DNA of 64,000 nt, from assembly GCA_977020255.1 (NCBI GenBank), contig CDROCS010000506.1, positions 3,596,001 to 3,660,000 on the forward strand. Reading direction: 5' to 3'. Made by a program: the position numbers and the translations under genes. How positions within the stretch are numbered: position 1 is the stretch's first letter; each line of letters opens with the position of its first letter. The notes beneath the pieces were generated by a model that saw only the letters and a list, made by a program, of their open reading frames with translations, made no database searches and was not told the origin of the DNA. Of this stretch, positions 19,834 through 34,300 are shown piece by piece. Source of the stretch: Obrimoposthia wandeli (lineage: Eukaryota).

Positions 19834-20461
19834 TAGTACCTTATTGTAAGTTTCGTGACCAAGGTCTAAATACTGTTGATATTATGTTACCTATATATAG
19901 TAATAACAAACATTGTTAAAAGTTAATACTATTCTAATCTTAACATTAGCCCCTAACCCTAAATAAATATCTTAAATTCAATTTAAATTGAAACCTATTG
20001 GAACTTTTAGTTGTTTTGCGGTTCTTACTCATTAGAAAAGCAAATATATGTGATCAGCAGAACAAATCGAAATTGGTGTCGCTGTAATGAAACAGTCATA
20101 AATGCTGTTTTTTTAAACATTTAGTTTGCAATAAAACCTTTCAATCAGTGTTTAAACTCTTAATTGTCAAGTATTTTGTTCTTGTCATACCTTTTTATGT
20201 GCCCGCGATCTTACTTTTGACCTCTTCTTGATTTTCCTTATAGTTTTCATGAAATTATTATGACTATAATCTATACCAAGTTTTAAGCGTAGTTGTTAAC
20301 CCTTCATTCATTTGAATTACTTCAGGTGAAATATTAGATTAAACGACTATTTGTTAGAATACATTAACTCTTGGTTTAGCCAATCATTACCAGATAGAAT
20401 AATCTCAGCGAGATATTCAAGTAATGAATGAGTTAACTTATAAATCATAAAGGATTTCAAA

Positions 20462-21454
20462 ATGAAAAAGACTATTCTTGCTACTGCAATTTTACTAGCT
20501 GGCGCTGCAAACGCTGCTGAAGTTTACAGCAACGATGACACAACTATCTCTCTAGGTGGTTCTTTCCGTGGTAACGTTGTTATTGCTGATTCTGATAACG
20601 TTAAATTCCAAGATGCTGGCTCACGTTTCGATATTAAAGCAGTTAAAGATATTGAAGATGGTCTTAAAGCTTTTGGTCATTTAGAAGTTAAATATCGCAG
20701 CGATGGCGATACGCTATATATGCAAAAAGCGATTGTTGGTCTAGAGCATGACGTATACGGTACTGCAACTCTAGGTAAACAAATGGGTCTGAATGATGAC
20801 TTAGTTATGAATGATTTCTCTTATGAGAACGGTGTTTATAACGAAGATAATACTTTATTTGGTTCTGATTCTGAAGACCAACTGAAATATACTAAATCAT
20901 TCGGTGGCGCTACAGTAGTTGTTTCATTAATGGACCAAGATACTTATGCTATCGGTGGTACATATGAAGTTGCAGGCCTAACGCTTGGTGGTTCTTACAA
21001 TATTGCAAATGACCGTACTGTTACAACAACAACAACTTCGCATACGCACCTTACTCCTGGTTCGGCTCCTACAGAAACTAAGACCAAGACTTCAGTAACA
21101 ACTGACAACTCTACTTATATCGTAGGTGCTCAATACTCACTTGACGCATTAACATTAGGTGTTCAATATCAAGCAAGTGAAGTTGGTAGCGAAGATTTCT
21201 CTGCATACGGTCTAGGTGCTCATTACCAATTAGGTCAAGCTGGTCTATACGCTATGTATGATGTACTAGATGGTAAATTTGATGATGCTGTACTTAAAGG
21301 CGACGGTTCTATCATCGTTCTAGGTGCTGACTATGAACTAGTTAAAGACGTTAAAGCATACGTAGAATTCGATTCAAGTGACTTTGATGTAGATGGTTCT
21401 GCTTCATCTGACTCTGATGAAAAAGTTACAATTGGTGCTCGTGTATACTTCTAA
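20462..21454 (+). CDS. General outer-membrane porin (OmpU/OmpC-like superfamily)
   Basis: Signal peptide ending ANA-AEVY, amphipathic strands, GSRF motif, C-terminal IGARVYF; strongly biased codon usage. Confidence 0.9.
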   Translation: MKKTILATAILLAGAANAAEVYSNDDTTISLGGSFRGNVVIADSDNVKFQDAGSRFDIKAVKDIEDGLKAFGHLEVKYRSDGDTLYMQKAIVGLEHDVYGTATLGKQMGLNDDLVMNDFSYENGVYNEDNTLFGSDSEDQLKYTKSFGGATVVVSLMDQDTYAIGGTYEVAGLTLGGSYNIANDRTVTTTTTSHTHLTPGSAPTETKTKTSVTTDNSTYIVGAQYSLDALTLGVQYQASEVGSEDFSAYGLGAHYQLGQAGLYAMYDVLDGKFDDAVLKGDGSIIVLGADYELVKDVKAYVEFDSSDFDVDGSASSDSDEKVTIGARVYF

Positions 21455-21496
21455 TCAACCTTGTTGATTCGTTGCTATAAACAACACTGATTAATG

Positions 21497-21530
21497 AAAC
21501 CGCGCACTGTAAAGTGTGCGGTTTTTTTTT
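21497..21530 (+). terminator. Intrinsic terminator of the porin gene
   Basis: AAACCGCGCACT-GTAA-AGTGTGCGGTTT plus long T-run. Confidence 0.9.
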
Positions 21531-21622
21531 AACTGTTGTTTCTCGTTATATCATTCGTTCGTAAACTTTTGATACTATAGTTATTCTTACCCCACTCTTA
21601 TAAAAAAATAATTGGTATTGCT

Positions 21623-23980
21623 ATGCACAAGATTATTCGTTTAAGTGTTTCCAGCCGTTTTGTTACGGCATTATTTATTAGCATGCTGTTGATGCTAAGT
21701 AATATCTCATTAGTGCATGCGAATGATGCCATTTATTTATCATCAGATTATGTAGCCGAAAATAACTTACCAGTCAGCAATGTAGCAGTGCAGGGCACCG
21801 TTGGAGAACCGCTGCCAACGGTTCAACCTCCACGTAACCGTGGTGGACACGAGAATAAAATAACTGATGAAGACCGTAATTGGCGAGTTTTAGGTCGCGA
21901 AAATAGAGGCTTTGGAACTAGCGATAATAAAGATTATCGTTATAAAAATGATGATATGGCGCGTTTCATTTTCTTAATGGATGCGAGAGACCGTAAGAAT
22001 AAAGTATTAGCTAGCTTGGCTTTGTGGCCAGAACACCAAGAAAAATTGATTAATAACCTAACCGATGGCCAAGGTGCTAGTCGTTTATCATCTTTATTTA
22101 CGATTTTTGTATTAATGTTGGTTTGTGGTTTTATTGTAGAGCGTATAGCTAGTGTCAAAATGGACTCTTTTTCTGATGGCGTGGCTAAAGAAAAAGACAC
22201 CAGTTTTAAAGAAAATTTAGATTACGTATTAATGCGTGGCTTTTTTCAATATGTCGGCATTGCTATTTTTGCTTTAACAGCCGCGCTGATTGCCATTTAC
22301 AATTACGTCGAAACAGACCCATTTAGATTACTTAGCCTACATGCTTTAGGTTTAGTGGTAAAAATACGCTCGTTTCAAGTTGTACTAAGACTAATCTTTG
22401 CACCTTATGCTCGCGGTAATCGACTATTTAAAATTGATTGTAAATCAGCAAGTCGCTTGTATTGGTCAAGTCTTGGCTTTATGGCTGTTTATCTTACGAT
22501 TACAACGTTTTGGCGTATCTTAGTGGTGTTCTCATTAGATCCGATTCTATTTGCTTTGATTATCCCTTCTACTGGTATGATCATGAATATACTATCCATT
22601 GCTTTCATTTGGTTTAATCGCAGAACGATTGAAGCGATGTTTGCAAGCGGTAAGCAAACGAGTTCTGCCTTTACGCGATTCTTACGCCAAACATGGGCTA
22701 GCGTATTCACCATCTGGTTATTTATGGCTTGGGTATTCTGGGCTATGTATGAGTTTCTGGGCTACTACGAACAAGCAGATAACTTTACACCGATTTGGTG
22801 GTTGACGTTTGTTTACCCAATATTAGACCGCTTTATTTTTGTGTCGCTTGGCCAGCTTAAACGTATATCTTGGTTGCAGAGTCACTCGTTTGAACAGCGT
22901 TGTGATAAGTTTATTAATCGCGTGATTATAGCGCTGCGCGTTATCTTTGCGGCGGTTATCTTTTATCATATTGATGCTAGTTTTGATCATAATGCTTGGG
23001 CAAAGTTAGCCAATAGCTTTGGTAGCTTTATCCAAATGTTTGTGGATATCATTATCGTTATTATTGTCGCTTATGCTATCTGGGAAGTGATTCAATCTGC
23101 GATAGAACGCCATTTACCAGCTGATATTGATGATGGCGGCACATCGACACTTGAGGGTGAAGGCGGCGGCGGTGGTGCTTCTCGTTCTGAAACCTTATTG
23201 CCATTGGTGCGTTCATTTTTAATGGTATTCTTATTTTCTAGTGTGCTATTAATGATCTTAAGCATTGTCGGTGTTGAAATTGCGCCACTGTTAGCTGGTG
23301 CTGGTATCGTCGGTATTGCGGTCGGTTTTGGTGCGCAGAAACTGGTTCAAGATGTTATTTCAGGTATTTTCTTTTTACTTGATGATGCATTCCGTCGTGG
23401 TGAGTACATCGAAGCTGCAGGGTTACGTGGTACGGTTGAGCGTATTTCGATTCGTTCAATTACCTTACGTCATCATCTTGGTGCGATACAAACAATTCCT
23501 TTTGGTGAGATGGCTACCGTGCGTAACTTATCTCGAGATTGGATCACCAAAAAATTGGAATTCAGATTAGATTATCGCACCGACGTTGAGAAAGTGCGCA
23601 AGCTGATCAAGAAGGTCGGCCAAAAAATGTTATTGCATCCTGAATATGGACAGCATTTCTTATTACCACTAAAGTCACAAGGTGTGACGAGGGTTGAAGA
23701 GTCTGCGCTTATTTTCCGTATGAAGTTTACCTGTGTACCTGGTGAGCAATGGGTTATTCGCCGCGAAGCATTTAGACTAGTACAAGAATCATTAAAAGAT
23801 AATGGTATTGAGTTCGCGCATCGTTCTGTCCATGTATTAACCCAGCATGATGGTAAAGAAGACATTCAGAACAGTATTGAGCAAAATGCGGAGATGGCTG
23901 AAAAAATTGGCGCTGCAGCAGCATTAAGTGTGTCTGCGGATATTAAAAAGAACGATAGAATAGATTCGGATTATAACTAA
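21623..23980 (+). CDS. Large MscS-family mechanosensitive channel
   Basis: LLAGAGIVGIAVGFGAQKLVQDVISG, DAFRRGEYI, GTVERISIRS, IPFGEM; about 500-aa multi-TM N-terminal extension. Confidence 0.92.
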   Translation: MHKIIRLSVSSRFVTALFISMLLMLSNISLVHANDAIYLSSDYVAENNLPVSNVAVQGTVGEPLPTVQPPRNRGGHENKITDEDRNWRVLGRENRGFGTSDNKDYRYKNDDMARFIFLMDARDRKNKVLASLALWPEHQEKLINNLTDGQGASRLSSLFTIFVLMLVCGFIVERIASVKMDSFSDGVAKEKDTSFKENLDYVLMRGFFQYVGIAIFALTAALIAIYNYVETDPFRLLSLHALGLVVKIRSFQVVLRLIFAPYARGNRLFKIDCKSASRLYWSSLGFMAVYLTITTFWRILVVFSLDPILFALIIPSTGMIMNILSIAFIWFNRRTIEAMFASGKQTSSAFTRFLRQTWASVFTIWLFMAWVFWAMYEFLGYYEQADNFTPIWWLTFVYPILDRFIFVSLGQLKRISWLQSHSFEQRCDKFINRVIIALRVIFAAVIFYHIDASFDHNAWAKLANSFGSFIQMFVDIIIVIIVAYAIWEVIQSAIERHLPADIDDGGTSTLEGEGGGGGASRSETLLPLVRSFLMVFLFSSVLLMILSIVGVEIAPLLAGAGIVGIAVGFGAQKLVQDVISGIFFLLDDAFRRGEYIEAAGLRGTVERISIRSITLRHHLGAIQTIPFGEMATVRNLSRDWITKKLEFRLDYRTDVEKVRKLIKKVGQKMLLHPEYGQHFLLPLKSQGVTRVEESALIFRMKFTCVPGEQWVIRREAFRLVQESLKDNGIEFAHRSVHVLTQHDGKEDIQNSIEQNAEMAEKIGAAAALSVSADIKKNDRIDSDYN

Positions 23981-24097
23981 TTCGCAGTATATTTTTAATA
24001 TTATGAATGGGTTGTTAAGTGAGCAGTACGCTATCTTGGACTGTTTTTTTTTGATAACCTGATCTGTCTTAGTTGTATTTAGTTAAAGAGAGTTCAA

Positions 24098-25279
24098 GTG
24101 CGCAGTAAATTAAATAATAGCCGTCTGCTTATCTACAGTCATGACTCTTTCGGTCTTGGGCATTTGCGTCGCTGTAGAACTATCGCGCATGAGCTTGTTG
24201 ACCGATACAAGGGCTTGTCTGTGCTTATAATTACAGGCTCGCCGATTATTGGCCGTTTTGATTTTAAAGCCCGTGTTGATTTCATTCGTATACCTGGTGT
24301 GATTAAGTTGCATAACGGTGAATACACTTCACTCGGTTTACTTATTGATCTTGCTGATACCCTGGCATTACGTGAAGCTATTATTCTTAATACCTCAAAA
24401 GTATTTAAGCCAGATATTTTTCTTGTAGATAAAGAACCGGGTGGCTTAAAAGATGAAGTCATTAGCACCTTAGAATATTTTAAAGACACAGATACCAAGT
24501 GTATCCTCGGCTTACGTGATGTGATGGATTCACCTGAGTTATTGAAGAAAGAATGGCAGAAAAAAAACGTGATGCCGTTACTCGAGAATCTTTACGATGA
24601 ACTTTGGGTTTATGGCCCCGCTGAAGTATCGAACCCATTAAAAGGCTTGGACATCAAACAAGTTGTTATAGATAAAACTTTGTTTGGTGGTTATTTACCT
24701 CGGCAGTTACCACAAAAAATCGATACTGATTCTATCAATTTCCCCGAACGCCCTTATATTTTGGTTACCCCTGGTGGTGGCGGTGATGGTATCGAGATGA
24801 TTGACTGGGTGCTTCGTGCATATGAAAGTGATCAATCCTTGATGCCAGCGTTGTTTGTACTTGGGCCTTTCATGCCAGCTACTGAACGCAATGAATTTTT
24901 GCGCAGAGCTGAAGTACTTCCTCATGTTGATGCGCTTACATTTAGTAATCACCTTGAGCATTTAATGTTTGAGGCTGAAGCCGTGATCGCAATGGGCGGG
25001 TACAATACATTTTGTGAGATCTTATCGTTTGATAAACCGGCAATGATACTGCCGCGTACACAACCACGTGAAGAACAGCTTATTCGAGCGCGTAATGCGG
25101 CGTCGATAGGGCTATTATCTATGCTTGATTTAGAGTCAGAACGTACAACAGAAGTGATGGTTGACGGTATTTTTAAATTATTACAGCAGGACAAGCCGAG
25201 TAAACATAAACTCGATAAATTACTCAACGGTTTAGACTTTGTCGCTGACCGATTTGGCGAGCTTGTATCAAAAGAGTAG
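24098..25279 (+). CDS. GT-B glycosyltransferase (COG4671-like, MurG/GT28-like C-terminus)
   Basis: SHDSFGLGHLRR, VTPGGGGDG, AMGGYNT, PRTQPREEQLIRA. Confidence 0.85.
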   Translation: MRSKLNNSRLLIYSHDSFGLGHLRRCRTIAHELVDRYKGLSVLIITGSPIIGRFDFKARVDFIRIPGVIKLHNGEYTSLGLLIDLADTLALREAIILNTSKVFKPDIFLVDKEPGGLKDEVISTLEYFKDTDTKCILGLRDVMDSPELLKKEWQKKNVMPLLENLYDELWVYGPAEVSNPLKGLDIKQVVIDKTLFGGYLPRQLPQKIDTDSINFPERPYILVTPGGGGDGIEMIDWVLRAYESDQSLMPALFVLGPFMPATERNEFLRRAEVLPHVDALTFSNHLEHLMFEAEAVIAMGGYNTFCEILSFDKPAMILPRTQPREEQLIRARNAASIGLLSMLDLESERTTEVMVDGIFKLLQQDKPSKHKLDKLLNGLDFVADRFGELVSKE

Positions 25280-25354
25280 TATCAAAGTACGATTATTGAA
25301 GTAATAGTATCGAAGTAATCGTATTAAAGTAATACTATCAAAATAATAGCATCG
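25271..25354. repeat. Six degenerate 14-bp tandem units (consensus AAGTAATAGTATCR)
   Basis: aaagagtagtatca/aagtacgattattg/aagtaatagtatcg/aagtaatcgtatta/aagtaatactatca/aaataatagcatcg. Confidence 0.8.
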
Positions 25355-25387
25355 CATTTTTAAATTTATTTTTCGCAAGGACCAGAT

Positions 25388-26551
25388 ATGTCAGCACCGC
25401 GTATTATGTATTATGTGCAATATTTATTAGGTATTGGTCACGTTCGCAGGTCATCTCTTATTGTGCAAGCGCTCTGTGAGCAAGGCGCTCAGGTTGATGT
25501 TATTTTTGGTGGCATGCCTGTGCCGAGTATGTCTTTTGGTAATGCGACTATGCACCAGTTAATGGCTGTAAAGAGTGCTGATTCCGGTTTTAGTGGCTTA
25601 GCTAAAGCAGATGGTACACCAGTCAGTGATGAGGACAAAAAACAGCGTACGCAGGCTTTATTAGCGCTTTGTGAAAAACTCCAACCAGATTTGATTGTTA
25701 CTGAAACATATCCATTCGGGCGCAGACAAATGCGTTTTGAGTTATTGCCCCTATTGGATTGGGCGAAATCCCAGGATAAGCCACCAGTGCTTGTTTCGTC
25801 TATTCGCGATATTTTACAGCGACGTTCAACGATCAGAGAACAAGAGTACGTGAGCCTCGTTAAAACCTATTACCAACACGTATTGGTACATGGTGATGAA
25901 GATTTTTATCCATTAGAAAGAAGTTTCCCTGTTGCCGATATGATTGCAGATAAAATTAGTTATTCTGGCTATGTGTGCCCGACATTAACTAGTCAATCTC
26001 ACTCGCCTAAAACAAGAGACACGATAGTGGTATCTGTAGGCGGCGGTAGTATCGGTAAAGATATTTTAGTTGCGGTGATGGCGCTGTATAACAGTGGATT
26101 TGCGGCGGATAAAAAGTGGTTGCTGATTACTGGGCCAAACATGGATCGCGCTGATAAAACCTATTTCCAAGCACAACAGCAGTCAAATTTACAGGTTGTC
26201 GATCTTGCTGATGACTTTTTAAGTGAGCTAAGTAATGCTTACGTATCAATTTCAAGAGCCGGTTATAACACTGTGATGGATTTATTGTTAACAGGTGTTC
26301 CGGCTGTCGTGATCCCGTTTGAAGGGGAGGGCGAGACAGAGCAGTTAGCGCGAAGTGAAGTATTAGCTGAAGCGAAAGTACTGCAGTTCGTCAAGAATGA
26401 TGAGTTGAGTGTCGACACATTAAAAGCGGCGATTAACAATGCATTAAATAGCGCGGCTGAAACAGTTAATATAGACAATCAAGGTGCACCTCAAAGCGCT
26501 AAATTGTTGATTGAGTGGGCTGTTAGTAAAGGCGACACGGCGAGACATTAG
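25388..26551 (+). CDS. GT-B glycosyltransferase (COG4671-like, paralog of the upstream gene)
   Basis: QYLLGIGHVRR, ETYPFGRR, VSVGGG, SRAGYNT, ETEQLARS. Confidence 0.85.
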   Translation: MSAPRIMYYVQYLLGIGHVRRSSLIVQALCEQGAQVDVIFGGMPVPSMSFGNATMHQLMAVKSADSGFSGLAKADGTPVSDEDKKQRTQALLALCEKLQPDLIVTETYPFGRRQMRFELLPLLDWAKSQDKPPVLVSSIRDILQRRSTIREQEYVSLVKTYYQHVLVHGDEDFYPLERSFPVADMIADKISYSGYVCPTLTSQSHSPKTRDTIVVSVGGGSIGKDILVAVMALYNSGFAADKKWLLITGPNMDRADKTYFQAQQQSNLQVVDLADDFLSELSNAYVSISRAGYNTVMDLLLTGVPAVVIPFEGEGETEQLARSEVLAEAKVLQFVKNDELSVDTLKAAINNALNSAAETVNIDNQGAPQSAKLLIEWAVSKGDTARH

Positions 26552-26665
26552 TCTGCTTAGTCGCTGGCTAATAAGTGCAAAATAAACGCGCAATGTGTTA
26601 TTCCTTCCGACATTGCAGCGTATCTCTTGTGAATATTTTAATTATAAAGTTTAAGGTAGTCTGTC

Positions 26666-27895
26666 GTGAAGAAAATTGCATTAGTACTTAAAGGCTATCC
26701 ACGCCTATCAGAAACCTTTATTGCGCAAGAAATTCGTGCGCTAGAATTACGCGGTTTCGATATTACCTTAGTTTCGTTACGTCATCCTACTGACACCAGT
26801 ACGCACCCGATCCATCAACAAATTGAAGCTGACGTCCTGTATTTACCGGAGTATTTACATGATGAACCATTACGGGTTTTAAAAGCATTTTGGAAGTTGG
26901 GGACTCAATTCTCACTGGTTAACGTATTTAAGCAATTTTTCCGTGATTTAAAACGTGATACTAGCCGTGGCCGTGTTCGTCGCTTTGGTCAAAGCCTAGT
27001 ATTAGCCGCAGAAATGCCAGAGGGTGTTGAACAAATGTATGCACACTTTCTGCATACACCTGCGTCAGTAACGCGTTATGCGGCACTGGTAAATGGCTTA
27101 CCTTGGTCTTGTTCTGCACACGCCAAAGATATTTGGACAACTGAGCAATGGGACTTATCAGAAAAACTTGCAGAGTTAGAATGGTTATCGACTTGTACAG
27201 CCGCTAATCACGAATACTTACAATCCCTCGCTAAAGACCCAAGCAAGGTACATTTGGTTTATCACGGTTTAGACTTCACTCGCTTTCAACATGTGGACCG
27301 CGTTTCCCGTGCCGATGTGAATGGCAGCTCAGCTGATAATCCGGTAAAAATTATCAGTGTTGGCCGCGCGGTACCGAAGAAAGGCTATGATGACTTATTG
27401 AATGCGTTGGCTAAACTACCAAAAGATTTACATTGGCAATTAACCCATATTGGCGGTGGCGGTATTTTAAAAGCGTTACGCCAGCAGGCTAAAGAACTTG
27501 GTATTGAACAGCACATTGAATGGCAAGGCGCACAACCACAATTAACTGTACTTGAAGCTTATCGTGAAAGTGATTTATTTGTACTAGCAAGTAAGATTGT
27601 TGCCGATGGTGACAGAGATGGTATGCCGAATGTGTTGATGGAAGCGCAGAGCCAGTCGGTATGCTGTTTGGCGACAGATATCTCAGGTATTCCTGAACTT
27701 ATCGACAGTGGCGAAAATGGTGTCTTGGTTGAATCTAATAATGTTGACCAGTTAACGGCCGCATTAGATGATTTATTACGACACGGTGAGAGACGTGAAC
27801 GTCTCGGTGCTGAAGGCCTGAAACAACTGCATCAACGTTTTGATGTCAAGATCGGCATCGATCAGTTAGAAAAGCTGTTTGATGATCGTGGCTAA
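26666..27895 (+). CDS. Family 4 glycosyltransferase
   Basis: LKGYPRLSETFI, SAHAKDIW, VGRAVPKKG, DRDGMPNVLMEA, ISGIPELI. Confidence 0.9.
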   Translation: MKKIALVLKGYPRLSETFIAQEIRALELRGFDITLVSLRHPTDTSTHPIHQQIEADVLYLPEYLHDEPLRVLKAFWKLGTQFSLVNVFKQFFRDLKRDTSRGRVRRFGQSLVLAAEMPEGVEQMYAHFLHTPASVTRYAALVNGLPWSCSAHAKDIWTTEQWDLSEKLAELEWLSTCTAANHEYLQSLAKDPSKVHLVYHGLDFTRFQHVDRVSRADVNGSSADNPVKIISVGRAVPKKGYDDLLNALAKLPKDLHWQLTHIGGGGILKALRQQAKELGIEQHIEWQGAQPQLTVLEAYRESDLFVLASKIVADGDRDGMPNVLMEAQSQSVCCLATDISGIPELIDSGENGVLVESNNVDQLTAALDDLLRHGERRERLGAEGLKQLHQRFDVKIGIDQLEKLFDDRG

Positions 27896-29165
27896 TACAG
27901 CTGCTAGGGCAGGTCTTAATAGAAACGTAAAAACAGGCGTTGCATTTTATGCGCCGCTTAAATCACCCTCACACCCAAATCCATCAGGTGATCGCAAGAT
28001 CGCCCGATTATTTATTCGAGCACTAGAGCAAGCTGGTTATCATGTTGAGCTGGCCAGTCAATTACGTTCTTTTGATAAAGCGGGCGATGTACTGCGTCAG
28101 CAGCGACTCATTGACCTAGCCAAAAAAGAAGCGCGCAGGATCATGCGACGTTGGCAACAGCAAGGCTTTACGCCACAGGCTTGGTTTACCTATCACTTAT
28201 ATTACAAAGCGCCAGATCTCATTGGCCCAATCATCTGTCAAACTCTGAATATACCTTACATAGTTGCTGAAGCATCATGGGCTGAAAAACGCGCTGATGG
28301 TCCTTGGGCTTTGTATCACTTACAAGTGGCTCTGGGGTTAAAACTGGCGAGTAAAGTCGTGTGTATAAATCCAAGGGATAAAATTGCGCTGGCTGACTTC
28401 TACGGCGATAGGTCTCCTTCTCGGCTTGTTACGCTCAAAGCTTTTATTGATGACTTGCCTACTAGTTATAGTGACTCGCTTATCCACCACTGTGGTATTA
28501 ACCACAACAATGCTACAACTAATGTAGTTGCGACGAATAAGATCGTGAATGACGGTTTAACGAGGCAAGATTTAGCTGATGCATACGGGTTAGATATTAA
28601 CTTACCTTGGCTTATCACTATCGCGATGATGCGCTGTGGTGATAAACATAGCTCATATCAGCAACTCAGTTCAGTGGTTGATTTGTTACAACAGCCTTAT
28701 CAACTATTGATTATTGGTGAAGGCGTCATGCAAACTGAAGTGCAGGCTCTTTTCACACAACATAAACAAGTTAAATTTGCAGGATCTGTTGAAAATAGCC
28801 AAATAAGGCTGTTATTACCACATTTTGAATTACTGGTGTGGCCAGCGATAAATGAAGCCCTTGGCATGATCTTTCTAGAAGCTCAGCAAGCGGGCGTAGC
28901 CGTTGTTGCTGGCGATCAGGGGGGCGTGAGTTCAATTGTAAGTAATAATGTCACAGGTATCCTCGTTGATGCATATAACGCGGATGCTTTGTCATTAGCA
29001 GTTGATAATTTACTTACTGATCCAGGAAAGTTAAATGCGATGAAACAAGCCGCGATTGAATATGTTGCTTTACATCATTCTATCGATGCTAGTGCGTTAC
29101 AGCTTAAACTGGTGATTGAGGGAGCTATTGAGAGTGTAGACCTAAAGGATAAAACACAATCATGA
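27879..29165 (+). CDS. Family 4 glycosyltransferase
   Basis: PSGDRKIARL, YHLYYKAPD, NEALGMIFLEAQ (EX7E); overlaps the upstream gene. Confidence 0.88.
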   Translation: MMIVANTAARAGLNRNVKTGVAFYAPLKSPSHPNPSGDRKIARLFIRALEQAGYHVELASQLRSFDKAGDVLRQQRLIDLAKKEARRIMRRWQQQGFTPQAWFTYHLYYKAPDLIGPIICQTLNIPYIVAEASWAEKRADGPWALYHLQVALGLKLASKVVCINPRDKIALADFYGDRSPSRLVTLKAFIDDLPTSYSDSLIHHCGINHNNATTNVVATNKIVNDGLTRQDLADAYGLDINLPWLITIAMMRCGDKHSSYQQLSSVVDLLQQPYQLLIIGEGVMQTEVQALFTQHKQVKFAGSVENSQIRLLLPHFELLVWPAINEALGMIFLEAQQAGVAVVAGDQGGVSSIVSNNVTGILVDAYNADALSLAVDNLLTDPGKLNAMKQAAIEYVALHHSIDASALQLKLVIEGAIESVDLKDKTQS

Positions 29166-29743
29166 TCCACGTTTATTTTATCCGCCATGGTCAAACGCAA
29201 TGGAATGTTGAAAAACGTTTGCAAGGTCGTACTGATATTCCGTTAAATGAAGCTGGTAGATTGCAAATAGCTGCTTACCAATTACCTGAGTCTTTACTGT
29301 CTATAGCTTGGTTCACGAGTCCGTTATTAAGAGCTCAACAAACCGCTGAATTACTTGGCGTTGATGCCGATACTGAAATCGCGTTGATCGAAATGAGTTG
29401 GGGTGATTGGGAAGGAAAAACATTAGCTCAATTAAGACAGCAAGATCCAGTTTATGTTGCTGAGGTGGAATCGTTGGGGTTAGATTTACGGCCTGTCGGG
29501 GGCGAGTCCCCTCGTTTAGTTGCAAAGCGGGTTAGTGATTGGGTTGAAAATTTGGATATGGGCAGTGTAGAGCAGCGAATTGGCTGTGTTAGTCATAAAG
29601 GTATTATCCGTGCTATTTATGCCAGTGCTACGAATTGGGATATGTTAGGTAAACCACCGCATAAACTCGATTTCCATTGTGCCCAGCACTTTTGTTTTGA
29701 TCGCGGATGTTGGTCTATTGGCGAACTTAATATCCAGTTATAA
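29162..29743 (+). CDS. Histidine phosphatase (PGM family)
   Basis: FIRHGQTQWN, LQGRTDIPL, TSPLLRAQQT, EMSWGDWEG, VSHKG; ATGA overlap with the last GT. Confidence 0.93.
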   Translation: MIHVYFIRHGQTQWNVEKRLQGRTDIPLNEAGRLQIAAYQLPESLLSIAWFTSPLLRAQQTAELLGVDADTEIALIEMSWGDWEGKTLAQLRQQDPVYVAEVESLGLDLRPVGGESPRLVAKRVSDWVENLDMGSVEQRIGCVSHKGIIRAIYASATNWDMLGKPPHKLDFHCAQHFCFDRGCWSIGELNIQL

Positions 29744-29755
29744 ATGGATATTTTC

Positions 29756-29789
29756 GAATTAGCGCTTACTTTGCAGTAAGCGCCAATTC
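29756..29789. terminator. Terminator between the GT operon and convergent fadL
   Basis: GAATTAGCGCTTACT-TTGC-AGTAAGCGCCAATTC. Confidence 0.7.
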
Positions 29790-29837
29790 GTTATTATTTT
29801 TATGAGTAGTTCGTTATCTTATAAGCTTAAAGCCGTC

Positions 29838-31283
29838 TTAGAAAACTAAATTCATTTGTGCTGAACCAACAATCGCTTCGGCTTTATTGGTAAACGCATA
29901 TGTTAAACCGGTATTACTGTCTGTTTCAGTAAATGACGTTTCTTCACCAACAATGTAAGCAGCGGCTAGGTCAATCGATAATGTTTTACTGATGTTAAAT
30001 GTTAAACCAGCTGTATACCACTGGCGTTCTGAGTCTGGAATACTGATCGTAGTATCACCAGCACTTTCATCTAACGCGTAACCTGCACGTAAGATAACTT
30101 TGTCACCTAAGTAATATGATAGACCTGCTGAATAGCGAATGTTGTCTTCATAGTTGTAAGCCTTTTCGAATAACACTGAATTGTCTTCACTCGCAACACC
30201 TTTGAGGCCTTCAAAGCTGCTCCATTCTGTCCAGACTACACCGTATTGCAGTGCTATATCCCCAAAACGATGGAAACCGCCGAGTTCAGCTATAGCGGGT
30301 AATGATAAATCTAATGAACCAGTACCTGTATTCATTTTTACCCCGTCATCTGATCTTTTTGAATAATCCCCTTCAAAGGTAAGTTCTACTTCTGAGCGGT
30401 AGCTTACGCCTATTTTATGGTTAGCATTGAGATCAAGTAAAACACCAGCATTCCAACCAAACCCAATGTCATCACCTTCTAATGTAAAAGCGGTTTCGCC
30501 ACGAGCCATGCCTGCTAATGGACCGGCTATCTGAGGGTTAGAAACATAGGCCTCAGCAGTTGTATACGGATCTGGAGATGTACTCGCTGCGGTTAAAACA
30601 GTCGTAAGTGCAGTTCCTGCAGCTGCATCTCCTAAATTTCGTTCTAGCTCTGCGCTACCATATACAATTTGAGCACCAACACCTAGACGTAATTTTGAAC
30701 CCACTTTAAATGCTAAGCTTGGGTTAAAATTAAATGTGGTTAATTTTGTTGAGCCACCAAGTAAGCCTGCTGCATAATCTTCAGGGAATTCAGTGTTGGT
30801 ACCGTAGTTCGTGTAACCAGCTAAACCAATGGCGAGTTTGCTACTGACTGGAATGACAGCATAAATTGATGGAATCGTTGAGGTGTTTGCTGAATTTTCA
30901 ACATTGTAACTAGACTTAGTTGGTACAGCGAAGTCATCTTGGATTAGTGAATTTAAAATGGCATAGTTTCCTGCAAGTGGAGAGTTTTCTCCCGTTGTCT
31001 CAACTGTAGGCTCTACATAAGCCCCACCAAATGAAAAGGCGAATTTGTCAAACGATGCCGCTGCTGCGGGGTTGGTTGCTATTACAGCTGCATTATCAGT
31101 GTTAGCTGCAAAACCTGCATTGGCGTTACCCAGTGCCGATGCAGATTGTACATTTACTTGGAATCCAGCTGCAGATACTTGCGCACTGGCAATCATTGTT
31201 GCCGTTACCATTGCGTTAATTACCGCTTTCGATAGGACACTTTTTTTGAATACATTCTGTTTGAACAAATGGTTTTTTTTCAT
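29838..31283 (-). CDS. fadL: FadL/OmpP1 long-chain fatty acid channel, copy 1 (loop insertions)
   Basis: AGFQV hatch start, NPA motif, NFNPS, IPDSERQW, C-terminal F. Confidence 0.9.
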   Translation of the reverse strand: MKKNHLFKQNVFKKSVLSKAVINAMVTATMIASAQVSAAGFQVNVQSASALGNANAGFAANTDNAAVIATNPAAAASFDKFAFSFGGAYVEPTVETTGENSPLAGNYAILNSLIQDDFAVPTKSSYNVENSANTSTIPSIYAVIPVSSKLAIGLAGYTNYGTNTEFPEDYAAGLLGGSTKLTTFNFNPSLAFKVGSKLRLGVGAQIVYGSAELERNLGDAAAGTALTTVLTAASTSPDPYTTAEAYVSNPQIAGPLAGMARGETAFTLEGDDIGFGWNAGVLLDLNANHKIGVSYRSEVELTFEGDYSKRSDDGVKMNTGTGSLDLSLPAIAELGGFHRFGDIALQYGVVWTEWSSFEGLKGVASEDNSVLFEKAYNYEDNIRYSAGLSYYLGDKVILRAGYALDESAGDTTISIPDSERQWYTAGLTFNISKTLSIDLAAAYIVGEETSFTETDSNTGLTYAFTNKAEAIVGSAQMNLVF

Positions 31284-31618
31284 GACTAATCCCTGTCTTA
31301 TATAAATAATGTAGAAGTAAATACATCCATGTTAATTACTGTGTTAGTCGAACGTGTGAACAGGTCGCTACCTGAGTTCGATTTATTACAGGGGCTATTA
31401 TAGGGATTTAGTGAAATGTTTATGTGAGGACCGGAGGCTTGTAATTAGTAACGCTATTCAAATTTGAATGAACGTTTGAAGTTAGTATTTACTATAGGTC
31501 AGTGGCTTAGCCTTAAGTAGTTTATAAGTACTAATACAATCTAATGTGTTTTAGTGATAATAGTATTAACTGTATTTTAAGCCATAATTGATATGAGTTA
31601 ATGCTCTATTTACCTTGG

Positions 31619-32914
31619 TTAATCAATCAATTGATAGTTTAGCTGGAGTCCAAGCATAGTTGTATCGCCTTTAGTACTTACATCGAAGTCATCGGAACCA
31701 ATAGTATCTTTAATGCGCGTAGTTTCGTATCTCGCATAAGTAAGGCCTATATCAAAGCTTAATGACCGACTTGCGAAATAGGTTAACCCTGCACTGAAGT
31801 TGGTTTTTTTATCAAAAGGTATCGAGAAGGTAGCGCTTTCAGTGGATTTTTCAGTTGAAGCGCCACTGCGTAGCAAGATAACATCGTTTAATTTATAACT
31901 GACTGCAAAAGCAAATTTCCAGCTATCTTCAGCATTTACTGATTCTAATAGACATTGCCCTTGCGGCAAGTTAAATCCAGCGTTAGCAGGGCAGTCAGGG
32001 TGTGAAACTGACACTTCATCTAGATTCTCCCAGCCATACCAAGCGAGTGAATATTGTATTGCTAATCTAGGGTCAAGTTGGTGGAAACCTGATAGAGTTG
32101 TTTCACTGGGTACGGCCATAGAAAGCGTACTAGTATCTTGAAATAACAGGTCATTATTAGTTGCAAGGGTCGTAAAGTCGCCTTCAGTTTCAATATCGGT
32201 TGCTGAGCGATAAGATAATCCGAATTGATGGCGTTTATTTATTTTGTATAACACGCCAACATCATATCTAAACCCTAATCCTGTGCCATGGAAATCTTGG
32301 TATATTTGACTCGGATTAGTAGGGTTTTGTGCACCATAATTTGTTGTTAATTTATAATTACCATGGATAGCGCTAACACCAACGCCGAGATACAGCTTGT
32401 CTGTCAGCTTGACGGCGACATTCGGGTTTATTTCATAAGTGAATAAAGAACGTTGTCCAGTGATGATACCGGCAGGATATCCAGTATCATAATTATTACG
32501 TACGTTATAATTTGAAAATGTAGCAAAGCCAAATGACCACCTTTCATTAATAGGAAAGGCGAAATAGGCGGATGGTACAACGTAATTATCGCTAATGTTT
32601 TGCTGGTCTAACGCTGCAGGGTCATCGCTACTTGAATAATACTCGCCATTAATATCTTGTTCTGATTTAACAAAAATAGCCGCAATTGCGATACTCGGGT
32701 ATTCAAATGCTGCGGTGATTGCGGGGTTAACGGCGATATTGGCGAGGTTGCTGGTATCTGCTGCAGCACCGGCACCTGCGGTACCCAGTTCGATAGCGGA
32801 TGTTGTAGAGGATTGATAGCTTGCTGCGTTGGTTAAAGGGCTATAATAGGTTATTAAACTCAGAATCGCACTTAGATAAACGATTGGCGTATCACGGCTA
32901 CAACTTTTACTCAT
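31619..32914 (-). CDS. FadL/OmpP1 family channel, copy 2 (divergent)
   Basis: AVNPA, YVVPSAY, EINPNV; atypical N-terminus (ASYQ) and C-terminus (YQLID). Confidence 0.85.
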   Translation of the reverse strand: MSKSCSRDTPIVYLSAILSLITYYSPLTNAASYQSSTTSAIELGTAGAGAAADTSNLANIAVNPAITAAFEYPSIAIAAIFVKSEQDINGEYYSSSDDPAALDQQNISDNYVVPSAYFAFPINERWSFGFATFSNYNVRNNYDTGYPAGIITGQRSLFTYEINPNVAVKLTDKLYLGVGVSAIHGNYKLTTNYGAQNPTNPSQIYQDFHGTGLGFRYDVGVLYKINKRHQFGLSYRSATDIETEGDFTTLATNNDLLFQDTSTLSMAVPSETTLSGFHQLDPRLAIQYSLAWYGWENLDEVSVSHPDCPANAGFNLPQGQCLLESVNAEDSWKFAFAVSYKLNDVILLRSGASTEKSTESATFSIPFDKKTNFSAGLTYFASRSLSFDIGLTYARYETTRIKDTIGSDDFDVSTKGDTTMLGLQLNYQLID

Positions 32915-32961
32915 ATTTATTCCCTTAAAATGATGCTTTATTTTAAGGTTAGTAGAAAATA

Positions 32962-32987
32962 AAAATAGCGCCTTAAGGCGCTATTTT
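32962..32987 (-). terminator. Palindromic terminator between fadL copies 3 and 2
   Basis: AAAATAGCGCCTTAAGGCGCTATTTT perfect palindrome. Confidence 0.75.
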
Positions 32988-33028
32988 ATTTACTGTATTT
33001 AGATATTTATTAGACTATCTAAACAGTA

Positions 33029-34300
33029 TTAGAAACGGTAGTTTGCTTGAGCTGAAGCAATGATTGCATCACCAGAAGATTTAAAGCCGTATTCAACACC
33101 TGCTGTAGTAGATTCCGTGAAATCAACTTCTTCAACATAAATATAAGCTAGACCAAAATCTAGGCTTAATGCAGGGCTTACATTGTAAGTTGCACCGGCT
33201 GTATACCAGAAACGATCTGACTCAGGAATACTCAGTGTTGTTTCACCTGCTGATTTGTCATAAGCAAAGCCAGCGCGTAACACGATTTGATCAATTGTGT
33301 ATTCAGCACCAACTGAATAGCGGATATTGTCATCGAAGTCTTCTTCTTTTAAGAAGCACTCACCGTCAGCCGGTAGACAATCTGAACTTGTTGCTTTAAG
33401 TTCTTCGAATTTGCTCCATTGAGTCCAAAGTACACTATATGAAACTGCAAATGATTGTGTTAATGCATGATAACCTGAAAATTCGGCAGTAGCAGGTAAA
33501 GGTAAACTAAGGCCTGCATTCACTGTATCGCCACCACTTGTCAAACCCTTGAAATCACCTTCAAAATCCATATCCACTTGTGAGCGATACGCTAAGCCAA
33601 TACGATTACTTTCACTGAATTCAAATAACACGCCTGCGTTCCAGCCGAAACCCCAAGTATCACCTTCCATTTCGAAGTAAGATGCATCTGCTGGTGTTCC
33701 ACTTGGAGACCCTGGGATTCTGCCTGCCAAATCACCTTGATAGCGCTCAACGGTTGCTGTGCCGTAGGTAGCATTTAAGCCCAAACCTAAGCTAAGTTGT
33801 TCAGTCGCTTTAAATGAAATACTTGGATTGATGTTAAAGGTCATTAAATCAGTTGTACCAGCTGCAGTACCAGCAGCATAGTCTTCTTCAAATTCAGTTG
33901 CTACACCGTAAGTTGAAAACAGACCAAGACCAACAGCAAATTTATCGTTAATCGGTTGAATGAAATAAGCAGCAGGAACAAAAGCGCTATGTACTATATT
34001 ATCAGCATCCAAACGACTTACATCTCTAGGACCCGCTAAAACTGAATCACTAACACCCTCAATATTTACATCTGGTGCGACATAAGAACCGACGATTGAT
34101 AATTCAGCTTGTTTGAAACGTGACATTGCTGCCGGGTTACGTGCAAGTACAGATGCGTTATCGGCAACGGCTGCTTCACCAGCAAAAGCTCGTCCAAGAC
34201 CAGATGCTGAATGTTCGCTTACTTGGAAACCTGCAGCAGAAGATTGTGCAGTTACCAGCAGTAGGGCTGTAGCAAGCGTTGTTTTTTGAAATTTAGACAT
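33029..34300 (-). CDS. fadL: FadL long-chain fatty acid channel, copy 3 (most canonical)
   Basis: AGFQVSEHSASGLGRAFAG, ARNPAAM, NINPS, SIPESDRFW, QANYRF. Confidence 0.95.
   Translation of the reverse strand: MSKFQKTTLATALLLVTAQSSAAGFQVSEHSASGLGRAFAGEAAVADNASVLARNPAAMSRFKQAELSIVGSYVAPDVNIEGVSDSVLAGPRDVSRLDADNIVHSAFVPAAYFIQPINDKFAVGLGLFSTYGVATEFEEDYAAGTAAGTTDLMTFNINPSISFKATEQLSLGLGLNATYGTATVERYQGDLAGRIPGSPSGTPADASYFEMEGDTWGFGWNAGVLFEFSESNRIGLAYRSQVDMDFEGDFKGLTSGGDTVNAGLSLPLPATAEFSGYHALTQSFAVSYSVLWTQWSKFEELKATSSDCLPADGECFLKEEDFDDNIRYSVGAEYTIDQIVLRAGFAYDKSAGETTLSIPESDRFWYTAGATYNVSPALSLDFGLAYIYVEEVDFTESTTAGVEYGFKSSGDAIIASAQANYRF

What the first reader, a model, noticed from the sequence alone, without database searches (positions are those of the whole stretch)
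21623..29743. MscS channel + four glycosyltransferases + histidine phosphatase: operon with no known product
Seen: six co-oriented genes, the last three overlapping: a 785-aa MscS with a large N-terminal membrane extension, two paralogous COG4671-like GT-B enzymes, two GT4 enzymes and an RHG phosphatase. There are no nucleotide-sugar, Wzx/Wzy, ABC-export or priming-GT genes, and the GTs show no signal peptides. Known: GT + phosphatase pairs make compatible solutes through phosphorylated intermediates (trehalose, sucrose, glucosylglycerate, mannosylfructose), and MscS channels release solutes on osmotic downshock. Inference: a pathway for a multi-sugar cytoplasmic osmolyte/piezolyte or glycolipid head group with a dedicated release channel. 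I recall similar GT-phosphatase-MscS blocks next to ABC transporters in Alphaproteobacteria with no assigned product; this copy would be a minimal version.
Basis: partly seen in the sequence, partly recalled or inferred. Interest (0 to 1): 0.72.

Follow-up and report, generated by a model that had tools for sequence, protein, structure and literature searches.

The report
Sugar-building gene cluster with own release channel
A Moritella bacterium carries a conserved set of four sugar-joining enzymes and a phosphatase next to a dedicated pressure-valve channel. Related bacteria carry the same enzymes with a signal-controlled pump instead, which suggests an unidentified soluble sugar compound that is made inside the cell and released on demand.

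Summary
Six co-oriented genes sit at the stated coordinates in a Moritella chromosome: a 785-aa YbiO-like MscS, two GT28-C/GT1-like paralogs, two GT4 enzymes and a histidine phosphatase. The enzymes have no membrane or signal segments, and no polysaccharide export genes lie within 12 kb.

The glycosyltransferase module is widespread: at least 594 genome hits in Alpha- and Gammaproteobacteria. This MscS subfamily is specifically co-located with it, next to the module in 12 of the 13 contexts examined, down to 33% MscS identity and in three gene arrangements.

Among 86 surveyed loci, 58 carry a roughly 900-aa ABC exporter, most with a small cNMP-binding protein and many with a cyclase. Seven carry the MscS. 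None carries both. Most loci also carry a Yej/Gsi-like ABC importer and a CE4 deacetylase. Moritella lacks both and is a minimal version.

Best reading: a soluble, probably amino-sugar-containing glycoside is built in the cytoplasm and released through a gated conduit. The product and its role (osmotic, periplasmic or signalling) are not known. I found no paper on it, and the S. meliloti msbA2 operon is not homologous. Other first-stage readers noted the same cluster on other DNA of this assembly (s1-229547, s1-200917, s1-220576).

The parts
21496..21525 (+). Strong intrinsic terminator after the porin gene. It marks the upstream boundary of the unit.
   Evidence: 13-bp stem followed by a T-run; sequence read.
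21623..23980 (+). YbiO-like MscS-family channel, 785 aa: signal peptide, periplasmic stretch of about 120 aa, about 9 TM segments, channel core at residues 533-740.
   Evidence: Pfam and NCBIfam matches. Hydropathy profile. Orthologs at 33-94% identity lie next to the same GT module.
24021..24052 (+). Weak hairpin followed by a U9 tract in the 117-nt spacer between the MscS and GTa. Possibly a partial terminator.
   Evidence: RNA fold of 23981-24062: -18.9 kcal/mol, z -2.7. Sequence.
24098..25279 (+). GTa: cytoplasmic GT-B glycosyltransferase with a GT28-C domain and an N-terminal G-L-G-H-L-R-R loop. Homolog of R. etli 'redA'.
   Evidence: PF04101 match. 49-91% identical orthologs in 80 or more loci. 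The redA name appears in CP001075.
25265..25353 (+). Tandem repeat, 14 nt x 6.4 copies, spanning the GTa stop and the GTa-GTb spacer. Possibly a regulator binding array or a strain-specific insertion.
   Evidence: Tandem Repeats Finder score 80. In Moritella PE36 the same spacer is only 24 nt.
25388..26551 (+). GTb: paralog of GTa. Cytoplasmic GT-B enzyme of GT1/GT28-like fold.
   Evidence: PF04101 at 5e-17. AF2 model pLDDT 88; the closest folds are GT1 natural-product GTs and MurG. 5810 homologs with E <= 0.001.
26666..27895 (+). GT4c: retaining GT4 glycosyltransferase, the best-conserved gene of the module. Homolog of R. etli 'redB'.
   Evidence: Glycos_transf_1 at 3e-34. Best NCBIfam match EpsE, 135 bits against a cut-off of 400. 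51-90% identity across loci.
27879..29165 (+). GT4d: second GT4 glycosyltransferase. Its start overlaps the GT4c stop (TTG at 27879 or ATG at 27882).
   Evidence: Glycos_transf_1 at 5e-25. Weak matches to BshA, MshA and sucrose-phosphate synthase. Overlap shown.
29162..29743 (+). Histidine phosphatase (branch 1, RHG motif). Its start overlaps the GT4d stop (ATGA).
   Evidence: His_Phos_1 at 4e-43. Best NCBIfam match CobC-type, 106 bits against a cut-off of 163. PDB relatives are PhoE and alpha-ribazole phosphatase.
29755..29790 (.). Long hairpin between HP and the convergent FadL gene. Likely a bidirectional terminator and the downstream boundary of the unit.
   Evidence: RNA fold: -21.5 kcal/mol, z -4.5, followed by a U-rich tail.

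Best explanation
This is the minimal Moritella form of a widespread, uncharacterised system that makes a soluble glycoside in the cytoplasm and lets it out through a dedicated gated conduit.

Shown:
- Four cytoplasmic GT-B enzymes and a histidine phosphatase form a conserved module. Two enzymes (GTa, GTb) are GT1/GT28-like and keep the His loop typical of inverting enzymes. Two (GT4c, GT4d) belong to GT4, a retaining family.
- A distinct YbiO-like MscS subfamily is found essentially only beside this module.
- In other lineages the same module lies beside a roughly 900-aa ABC exporter, usually with a small cNMP-binding protein and often a class III cyclase.
- In the surveyed loci the two devices never occur together.
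- Most loci also encode a periplasmic-binding-protein importer of the Yej/Gsi type and a cytoplasmic CE4 deacetylase.

Inferred:
- The GTs assemble a short oligosaccharide or heteroside from common nucleotide sugars, probably on a phosphorylated acceptor that HP later dephosphorylates.
- In relatives the product likely contains N-acetyl-hexosamine or its uronic acid, which the CE4 enzyme partly deacetylates. Moritella would leave it acetylated.
- The MscS-type channel releases the product to the periplasm when membrane tension rises, for example on osmotic downshift. This is the job the ABC exporter does on a cNMP signal in other lineages.
- Where present, the importer takes the product back.

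The physiological role is open. An osmotic buffer or periplasmic solute is the leading guess. A secreted signal or a shared good is the alternative.
For: - Gene content and cytoplasmic location of the enzymes.
- Conservation of the module: 594 confirmed genome hits. In the 80 fetched loci, GTa, GT4c and GTb are almost always together and GT4d-HP are together in about 25.
- MscS linkage: window, L001, L012, L096, L097, L098, L100, L101 (MscS after GT4d), L102, L103, L105 and L106 (divergent, alpha-type gene order, 33% identity). Only L107 (32%) is unlinked.
- Exclusivity: 58 loci with the ABC exporter, 7 with the MscS, 0 with both. On the GT4c tree the MscS label needs at least 2-3 changes, and Marinobacterium species differ in device.
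- A genome with the ABC type (G003) has no MscS ortholog. G001 and G002 have one only at the cluster.
- Moritella PE36 has a separate canonical 283-aa MscS and an MscK-like protein, so the cluster channel is an extra paralog.
- Importer, cyclase and cNMP parts identified.
- CE4 deacetylase: conserved motifs, an AF2 model at pLDDT 95, and CE4 structures as top matches.
- A TviB-like UDP-GlcNAc 6-dehydrogenase (583-586 bits against a cut-off of 592) and a GalE/TviC-like epimerase recur beside clusters.
- No polysaccharide export or priming genes appear among the frequent neighbour families in the 80 fetched loci or within 12 kb in the window.
- From established knowledge: MscS-family channels can act as metabolite exporters (MscCG and glutamate in Corynebacterium glutamicum). 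Synthesis plus leak-recapture importers are known for ectoine (TeaABC) and glucosylglycerol (Ggt).
Against: - No product, expression or transport data exist.
- Four glycosyltransferases are more than any known compatible-solute pathway uses. An oligosaccharide of three or four sugars may be too large for an MscS-type pore.
- HP and GT4d are missing from many Rhizobiaceae loci, so a phosphorylated intermediate is not a universal feature.
- Moritella-like genomes carry an unlinked 1030-aa cNMP-binding ABC exporter paralog, 30-32% identical to the cluster-linked exporters. It could serve the pathway, which would weaken a simple 'channel replaces pump' reading.
- A weak hairpin plus U9 tract after the MscS gene, and gaps of 97-396 nt before GTa in relatives, mean the channel may be transcribed separately.
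- The best full-length family match of GT4c is an EPS-type enzyme (EpsE/WcaL-like), though far below the cut-off.
Confidence: 0.5

Rival explanations
1. The module makes a strictly cytoplasmic compatible solute. The MscS is only its emergency valve on hypo-osmotic shock, the ABC exporter in other lineages is an unrelated neighbour, and the importer scavenges the solute from the environment.
For: - GT4 plus phosphatase pairs are the standard logic for sucrose, mannosylfructose and glucosylglycerate (established knowledge).
- GT4d has weak matches to sucrose-phosphate synthase, MshA and BshA.
- HP belongs to the same superfamily as the mycobacterial glucosyl-3-phosphoglycerate phosphatase (my own knowledge).
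- The organisms are marine, psychrophilic or piezophilic.
Against: - It needs four GTs.
- A CE4 deacetylase and a UDP-GlcNAc dehydrogenase in relatives point to an amino-sugar or uronic product, which is unusual for a compatible solute.
- The ABC exporter is present in 58 of 86 loci and is strictly exclusive with the MscS. That is hard to explain if it were unrelated.
- Moritella already has canonical MscS and MscK valves.
Confidence: 0.2
2. The module builds a membrane-bound or envelope glycoconjugate: a glycolipid head group, a lipid-linked oligosaccharide or a small capsule-like polymer such as a Vi-like HexNAcA chain. The ABC exporter flips or exports it. The MscS is linked because the product alters envelope mechanics, not because it passes through the channel.
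For: - GTa and GTb carry the MurG/PseG-like G-x-G-H loop and a GT28-C domain. GT28 includes lipid-acceptor enzymes.
- The nearest family of GT4c is EpsE/WcaL-like, and both GT4s give faint TviE matches.
- The ABC exporter resembles MsbA, HepA, PglK and ChvA.
- A TviB-like dehydrogenase lies beside some clusters.
- R. etli annotators called GTa a 'membrane-anchored protein'.
Against: - No TM or amphipathic anchor was detected in any GT.
- There is no priming transferase, flippase, polymerase, Wza or KpsMT in 86 neighbourhoods.
- A binding-protein-dependent importer is conserved with the module, which implies a soluble periplasmic ligand.
- A lipid flippase and an MscS channel are not plausible alternatives for one task.
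Confidence: 0.17
3. The enzymes modify an imported small molecule by glycosylating a peptide, toxin or host compound that the Yej-like importer brings in. The modified compound is then expelled, as a detoxification or signal-editing cycle.
For: - The closest folds to GTb are GT1 enzymes that glycosylate macrolides and other natural products, including the self-resistance enzymes OleI and OleD.
- The importer is nearest to the microcin C (Yej) and glutathione (Gsi) importers.
- Importer and exporter flank the GTs.
Against: - Moritella, L096 and L105 lack the importer yet keep all GTs.
- Four GTs plus a deacetylase and a phosphatase fit de novo assembly better.
- Identity to GT1 enzymes is only 14-16%.
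Confidence: 0.08

Closest known systems
Compatible-solute synthase/phosphatase pairs (sucrose-phosphate synthase/phosphatase; mannosylfructose-phosphate MfpsA/MfppA; glucosyl-3-phosphoglycerate GpgS/GpgP)
   Same: A cytoplasmic GT-B (GT4) enzyme is translationally coupled to a dedicated phosphatase. GpgP is also a histidine-phosphatase-superfamily enzyme (my own knowledge). No export machinery of the polysaccharide type is present.
   Different: This cluster has four GTs instead of one. No family cut-off is met (sucrose-phosphate synthase domain 50.6 bits against 576). The phosphatase is absent from many homologous clusters. Relatives add a CE4 deacetylase and dedicated export and import systems.
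MscS-family metabolite exporters and large MscS paralogs (MscCG/NCgl1221 of Corynebacterium glutamicum; YbiO of E. coli)
   Same: The protein has the MscS core (pore helix, beta domain, alpha-beta domain). Its N-terminal multi-TM extension matches YbiO over residues 246-744. MscCG is a precedent for an MscS-family protein serving as the efflux route for one metabolite (my own knowledge).
   Different: It is not a YbiO ortholog (163 bits against a cut-off of 596). It forms its own subfamily, found almost only beside this GT module. No known MscS is genetically tied to a biosynthetic operon in this way.
Cyclic beta-glucan / osmoregulated periplasmic glucan systems (NdvB/Cgs synthase with the NdvA/ChvA ABC exporter)
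   Same: A glycan is synthesised in the cytoplasm and delivered to the periplasm by a type I ABC exporter, with a role in osmoadaptation and host association. The cluster-linked exporter has weak ChvA matches.
   Different: The GT families are different (GT1/GT28-like and GT4, not GT84/GT2). This exporter has an insertion of about 290 aa in its ATPase domain, and some members carry cNMP-binding and GGDEF domains. An MscS alternative and a recapture importer are unknown for OPGs.
Mycothiol and bacillithiol early steps (MshA-MshA2-MshB; BshA-BshB)
   Same: A GT4 enzyme acts on a (phospho)acceptor with UDP-GlcNAc, followed by a phosphatase and a cytoplasmic de-N-acetylase. Both GT4s match the MshA and BshA models and structures weakly.
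   Different: Scores are far below the cut-offs. The deacetylase has the CE4 fold, not the LmbE type. There is no cysteine ligase, and two extra GT1/GT28-like enzymes are present.
S. meliloti msbA2 operon (SMb21188-SMb21191)
   Same: It is a rhizobial chromid cluster of glycosyltransferases with an MsbA-like exporter of an unknown saccharide (PMC3687685, PMC12239276).
   Different: It is not homologous. tblastn with the window's proteins found nothing in pSymB 925-950 kb, where that operon lies. The homolog of the present cluster lies elsewhere on pSymB.

Membership tests
MscS family (small-conductance mechanosensitive channels) | Pore-lining TM3 helix plus beta domain plus C-terminal alpha-beta domain | tested here: met
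   PF21088, PF00924 and PF21082 are all above their gathering scores at residues 535-731.
YbiO (PRK11465) orthologs | Score at or above the NCBIfam equivalog cut-off (596 bits) | tested here: not met
   162.7 bits over residues 246-744. The architecture is similar, but the protein is not an ortholog.
MscS family | Tension-gated conductance | not testable with these tools
   This needs patch clamp or a downshock rescue assay.
GT28 / GT1-like inverting GT-B glycosyltransferases (GTa, GTb) | GT-B two-Rossmann fold with a C-terminal nucleotide-sugar domain and an N-terminal Gly-rich loop carrying His | tested here: met
   PF04101 match. AF2 model at pLDDT 88 with GT1 and MurG structures as top matches, TM about 0.6. 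G-x-G-H-x-R-R is present in both paralogs and invariant in A1.
MurG | NCBIfam TIGR01133 equivalog cut-off (250 bits) | tested here: not met
   54.5 bits, C-terminal half only.
GT4 retaining glycosyltransferases (GT4c, GT4d) | Glycos_transf_1 domain above the gathering score | tested here: met
   118 and 88 bits against a cut-off of 26.4.
Characterised EPS/LPS/capsule GT4 enzymes (EpsE, WcaL, TviE, PglH/J, WaaB-like) | Score at or above each curated equivalog cut-off | tested here: not met
   The best match is EpsE, 135 bits against 400. All others are lower.
Sucrose-phosphate synthase / MshA / BshA | Score at or above the curated cut-off | tested here: not met
   GT4d: 50.6 against 576, 51.8 against 462 and 55.6 against 274. 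GT4c is similar.
Histidine phosphatase superfamily, branch 1 | His_Phos_1 domain with the catalytic RHG motif | tested here: met
   147.7 bits. The N-terminus reads F-I-R-H-G-Q-T.
CobC alpha-ribazole phosphatase | TIGR03162 equivalog cut-off (162.9 bits) | tested here: not met
   106.2 bits.
Compatible-solute pathway | The product accumulates in response to osmolarity, temperature or pressure | not testable with these tools
   No metabolite or expression data were available.
Conserved GTa-GTb-GT4c system (this report's own grouping) | GTa, GTb and GT4c orthologs co-located | tested here: met
   The window and nearly all full-length loci among the 86 surveyed.
Conserved GTa-GTb-GT4c system (this report's own grouping) | CE4 deacetylase and Yej/Gsi-like importer present | tested here: not met
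   There is no match on the window's contig C506; matches fall only on other bacterial contigs of the assembly. This is why the Moritella copy is called the minimal version.

The most novel reading that the evidence does not exclude
Many marine and plant-associated Proteobacteria make a so far unknown small acidic amino-sugar oligosaccharide in the cytoplasm. They release it to the periplasm or the medium through a gated device and take it back with a dedicated ABC importer. The device is a tension-gated MscS paralog in one lineage and a cNMP-controlled ABC exporter in others. This would be a new regulated release-and-recapture cycle for a periplasmic osmoprotectant or an intercellular or host-directed signal. 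It would also be the first case of an MscS-family channel and an ABC pump acting as evolutionary alternatives for the same cargo.
Probability: 0.3. Interest if true: 0.85.

Novelty: new variant of a known kind. Interest (0 to 1): 0.62.

Why it matters
If the reading holds, a gene set present in hundreds of genomes would gain a function, and a new bacterial glycoside would be waiting to be identified. These genomes include Rhizobium, Sinorhizobium, Roseobacter-group bacteria, Rhodospirillales, Marinobacterium, Amphritea, Osedax symbionts and all sampled Moritella.

The strict either/or pattern between an MscS paralog and a cNMP-linked ABC exporter is the main point of interest. It gives a genetically tractable test of whether large MscS paralogs, whose roles are mostly unknown, act as cargo-specific release valves. 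It also links cyclic-nucleotide signalling to metabolite export in rhizobia.

The Moritella copy has five enzymes and one channel, with no importer, deacetylase or regulator. That makes it the simplest version to reconstitute.

Tried and rejected
1. The S. meliloti msbA2 operon (SMb21188-91) as the known homolog. Rejected: there was no tblastn hit in pSymB 925-950 kb.
2. The gene names redA and redB from R. etli CIAT 652. Four full-text searches found no paper that describes them, and a DOI look-up for a RosR-regulon paper I recalled was not held.
3. Searches for 'COG4671', for locus tags, and for combinations of mechanosensitive, glycosyltransferase, histidine phosphatase and cNMP/ABC/Rhizobium terms. 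Nothing relevant was found.
4. The genome search 'relatives' fails because the window's assembly has no relatives in the collection. 'of' needs a G handle.
6. Rfam scan of 20000-31500: no riboswitch or other RNA family.
7. Sequence search of PDB for close solved relatives: only distant GT-B and phosphatase hits.
8. ESM Atlas search with GTa: only unnamed GT28-C clusters.
9. 'Moritella has no homolog of the ABC exporter at all' was rejected. An unlinked cNMP-binding paralog exists in Moritella-like contigs.

Full report
**1. What is in the window**

They are MscS 21623-23980, GTa 24098-25279, GTb 25388-26551, GT4c 26666-27895, GT4d 27879-29165 and HP 29162-29743, all on the + strand.

Pfam and NCBIfam give these assignments:
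- The first protein is an MscS-family channel with all three core domains at residues 535-731. Its best named match is the YbiO type (PRK11465) over residues 246-744. The score is 163 bits against a cut-off of 596, so the architecture is YbiO-like but the protein is not an ortholog.
- GTa and GTb match only the GT28 C-terminal domain.
- GT4c and GT4d match Glycos_transf_1.
- HP is a branch-1 histidine phosphatase with the RHG motif.

No curated equivalog cut-off is met for any characterised enzyme. The best GT4 match is EpsE (135 against 400) and the best phosphatase match is CobC (106 against 163).

GTa and GTb are old paralogs, 21% identical with E 8e-16. Both keep the N-terminal G-x-G-H-x-R-R loop.

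A hydropathy scan shows the channel has a signal peptide, a periplasmic stretch of about 120 residues and about nine hydrophobic segments before the pore helix. The four transferases and the phosphatase have no signal peptide and no membrane segment.

GT4c/GT4d overlap by 14-17 nt and GT4d/HP share ATGA.

The unit has clear boundaries. A strong terminator follows the upstream porin gene at 21496-21525. A long hairpin at 29755-29790 (z -4.5) separates HP from the convergent FadL gene.

A weak hairpin plus U9 tract at 24021-24052 follows the channel gene. Co-transcription of the channel with the transferases is therefore plausible but not assured.

The surrounding 12 kb on each side holds housekeeping genes only. 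No Rfam family matches.

**2. Whose genome**

The closest proteins are from Moritella: GTb is 96% identical to M. marina, and homologs occur in all sampled Moritella species.

The assembly holding the window is 1.35 Gb in 6912 contigs and contains several bacteria. The window lies on a contig of more than 3.6 Mb, C506.

**3. The transferase module is widespread and has conserved partners**

A pattern scan of species-representative genomes found 594 confirmed relatives of GTb, and 80 loci were fetched. tblastn with the window's proteins shows GTa, GT4c and GTb together in almost every full-length locus. The taxa include Rhizobiaceae, Phyllobacteriaceae, Rhodospirillales, Sneathiellaceae, Roseobacter-group bacteria, Oceanospirillaceae and Thiothrix. 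GT4d and HP occur together in about 25 of the loci.

I clustered all neighbouring ORFs and scanned representatives. The recurrent partners are:
- a roughly 900-aa type I ABC exporter whose ATPase domain is split by an insertion of about 290 aa (some versions carry cNMP-binding and GGDEF domains);
- a small cNMP-binding protein;
- a class III nucleotide cyclase;
- a Yej/Gsi-like importer with a fused double ATPase, a 630-aa family-5 binding protein and two permeases;
- a 250-aa protein that directly follows GTb.

An alignment of the 250-aa protein shows invariant RDDD, H-x-x-H, PPWNR, H-x-D-x-x-W and THH motifs. Its AF2 model (pLDDT 95) matches CE4 (NodB-type) deacetylases.

A dehydrogenase that scores 583-586 bits against the TviB model (UDP-GlcNAc 6-dehydrogenase, cut-off 592) lies beside the cluster in three gammaproteobacterial loci. 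A GalE/TviC-like epimerase lies beside it in seven loci of both classes.

No priming transferase, flippase, polymerase or outer-membrane export gene appears among the frequent neighbours.

**4. The channel is tied to the module**

In the first 80 loci the channel was adjacent only in Moritella PE36 and Marinobacterium aestuariivivens. That scan had been capped and missed the nearest relatives.

I then looked up contigs encoding closer GTb homologs and homologs of the channel itself. Together with two other bacterial contigs of the same assembly, this gave 13 contexts for this channel subfamily. In 12 of them the channel lies next to the GT module.
- It lies upstream and co-oriented in the window, L001, L012, L096, L097, L098, L100, L102, L103 and L105.
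- It lies downstream of GT4d in L101 (38% identity).
- It lies divergent from a cluster with the alpha-type gene order in L106 (33% identity).
- Only L107 (32% identity) is elsewhere.

In the large protein search the channel has few close relatives, 46 clusters at E <= 1e-20. They come from the same taxa as the nearest GTb relatives.

**5. Either the channel or the pump**

Across 86 loci, 58 have the ABC exporter, 7 have the channel and none has both. Loci with the channel also lack the cyclase and the cNMP-binding protein.

On a GT4c tree the channel label needs at least two to three changes. Marinobacterium species differ: M. mangrovicola and M. zhoushanense have the pump, while M. aestuariivivens and M. 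rhizophilum have the channel.

The pump-type genome G003 has no ortholog of the channel. G001 and G002 have one only at the cluster.

Moritella PE36 also has a canonical 283-aa MscS and an MscK-like protein, so the cluster channel is an additional, specialised paralog.

One caveat applies. Moritella-like contigs (PE36 C25; C4844 and C1101 of this assembly) carry an unlinked 1030-aa cNMP-binding ABC exporter that is 30-32% identical to the cluster-linked pumps. I cannot exclude that it takes part.

**6. The Moritella version is minimal**

On contig C506 I found no CE4 deacetylase, no ortholog of the importer's binding protein and no close pump. The GTb-GT4c spacer is 114 nt, which leaves no room for the deacetylase gene. 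The locus therefore holds one channel, four transferases and one phosphatase.

**7. Interpretation**

Four facts point to a soluble compound that is made in the cytoplasm, let out by a gated device and, in most lineages, taken back:
- the enzymes are cytoplasmic and soluble;
- polysaccharide machinery is absent;
- a periplasmic-binding-protein importer is conserved with the module;
- a channel and a pump occur as alternatives.

The GTb model is closest to GT1 enzymes that glycosylate small molecules and to MurG. The two GT4 enzymes are closest to enzymes that act on small or phosphorylated acceptors (BshA, MshA, PimB, sucrose-phosphate synthase).

The phosphatase is translationally coupled to GT4d. 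This fits a phosphorylated intermediate, as in known compatible-solute routes.

The deacetylase and the TviB-like dehydrogenase in relatives suggest N-acetyl-hexosamine or its uronic acid in the product.

I therefore favour a short, possibly acidic, amino-sugar-containing glycoside, released on membrane tension in Moritella and on a cyclic-nucleotide signal elsewhere. Its role is inferred, not shown. An osmotic or periplasmic buffer is the leading guess and a secreted signal is an alternative.

Three points weigh against this reading. Four sugars may be too large for an MscS pore. HP is not universal. The nearest family of GT4c is EPS-like.

**8. Comparison with the known, and the literature**

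No family cut-off for a characterised pathway is met.

The S. meliloti msbA2 operon looked similar on paper (PMC3687685, PMC12239276) but is not homologous.

R. etli CIAT 652 annotators named GTa and GT4c redA and redB. I found no paper behind these names, and none on the cluster.

Other first-stage readers flagged the same kind of cluster on other pieces of this assembly, including versions with the deacetylase, an epimerase and the importer. That agrees with what I found independently on contigs C2422, C3093 and C3654.

**9. Verdict**

The system as a whole is uncharacterised. Its parts are of known kinds, and its linkage to alternative gated release devices is new. Interest is moderate to high, limited by the complete lack of product and expression data.

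Noticed in passing
G000 contigs C2422 (about 345-360 kb), C3093 (about 74-97 kb) and C3654 (about 9-24 kb); loci L085-L087 and L102-L104: The 1.35-Gb assembly that holds the window contains other bacteria carrying the fuller form of the same system. C2422 and C3093 show MscS (61% identical), GTa, GTb, CE4 deacetylase and GT4c. All three contigs have an importer binding protein 76% identical to that of L098. The assembly looks like a host plus several associated bacteria.
   Followed up: partly
window 25265-25353: A 14-nt unit (consensus GTATCAAAGTAATA) is repeated 6.4 times across the GTa stop and the GTa-GTb spacer. In Moritella PE36 the spacer is only 24 nt, so this array is specific to this lineage. 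Its function is unknown.
   Followed up: partly
window 29838-34300, minus strand: Three tandem FadL/TodX-family outer-membrane transporter genes (481, 431 and 423 aa) lie directly downstream, convergent with the cluster. The same trio follows the cluster in Moritella PE36 (L001).
   Followed up: no
L109:5282-8374 (G000 C4844), L110 (C1101), L108 (Moritella PE36 C25): A stand-alone 1030-aa ABC exporter with a C-terminal cNMP-binding domain, 30-32% identical to the exporters linked to the GT module in other bacteria. It sits in an unrelated neighbourhood in Moritella-like contigs. Two such contigs, 83% and 79% identical to PE36, suggest more than one Moritella-like organism in the assembly.
   Followed up: partly
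L005:15919-18585, L007:11660-15013: The cluster-linked ABC exporters have their ATPase domain split by an insertion of about 290 aa. Some carry cNMP-binding plus GGDEF domains at the C-terminus, which is an unusual architecture for a type I exporter.
   Followed up: no
L012 (Marinobacterium aestuariivivens): In this locus the MscS is split into two ORFs, GTa is broken and other genes appear fused. This is either a decaying cluster or a poor-quality assembly.
   Followed up: no
L044, L077, L039: Some gammaproteobacterial loci hold only GTa and GTb (L044 also has the CE4 enzyme) with the cNMP-binding protein (L044 and L077 also a cyclase), and no GT4 gene within the stretch fetched. This suggests GTa and GTb are the irreducible core.
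   Followed up: no
window 20462-21454: A Porin_4-family outer-membrane porin lies directly upstream with its own strong terminator. It is not conserved next to the cluster in other genomes.
   Followed up: no
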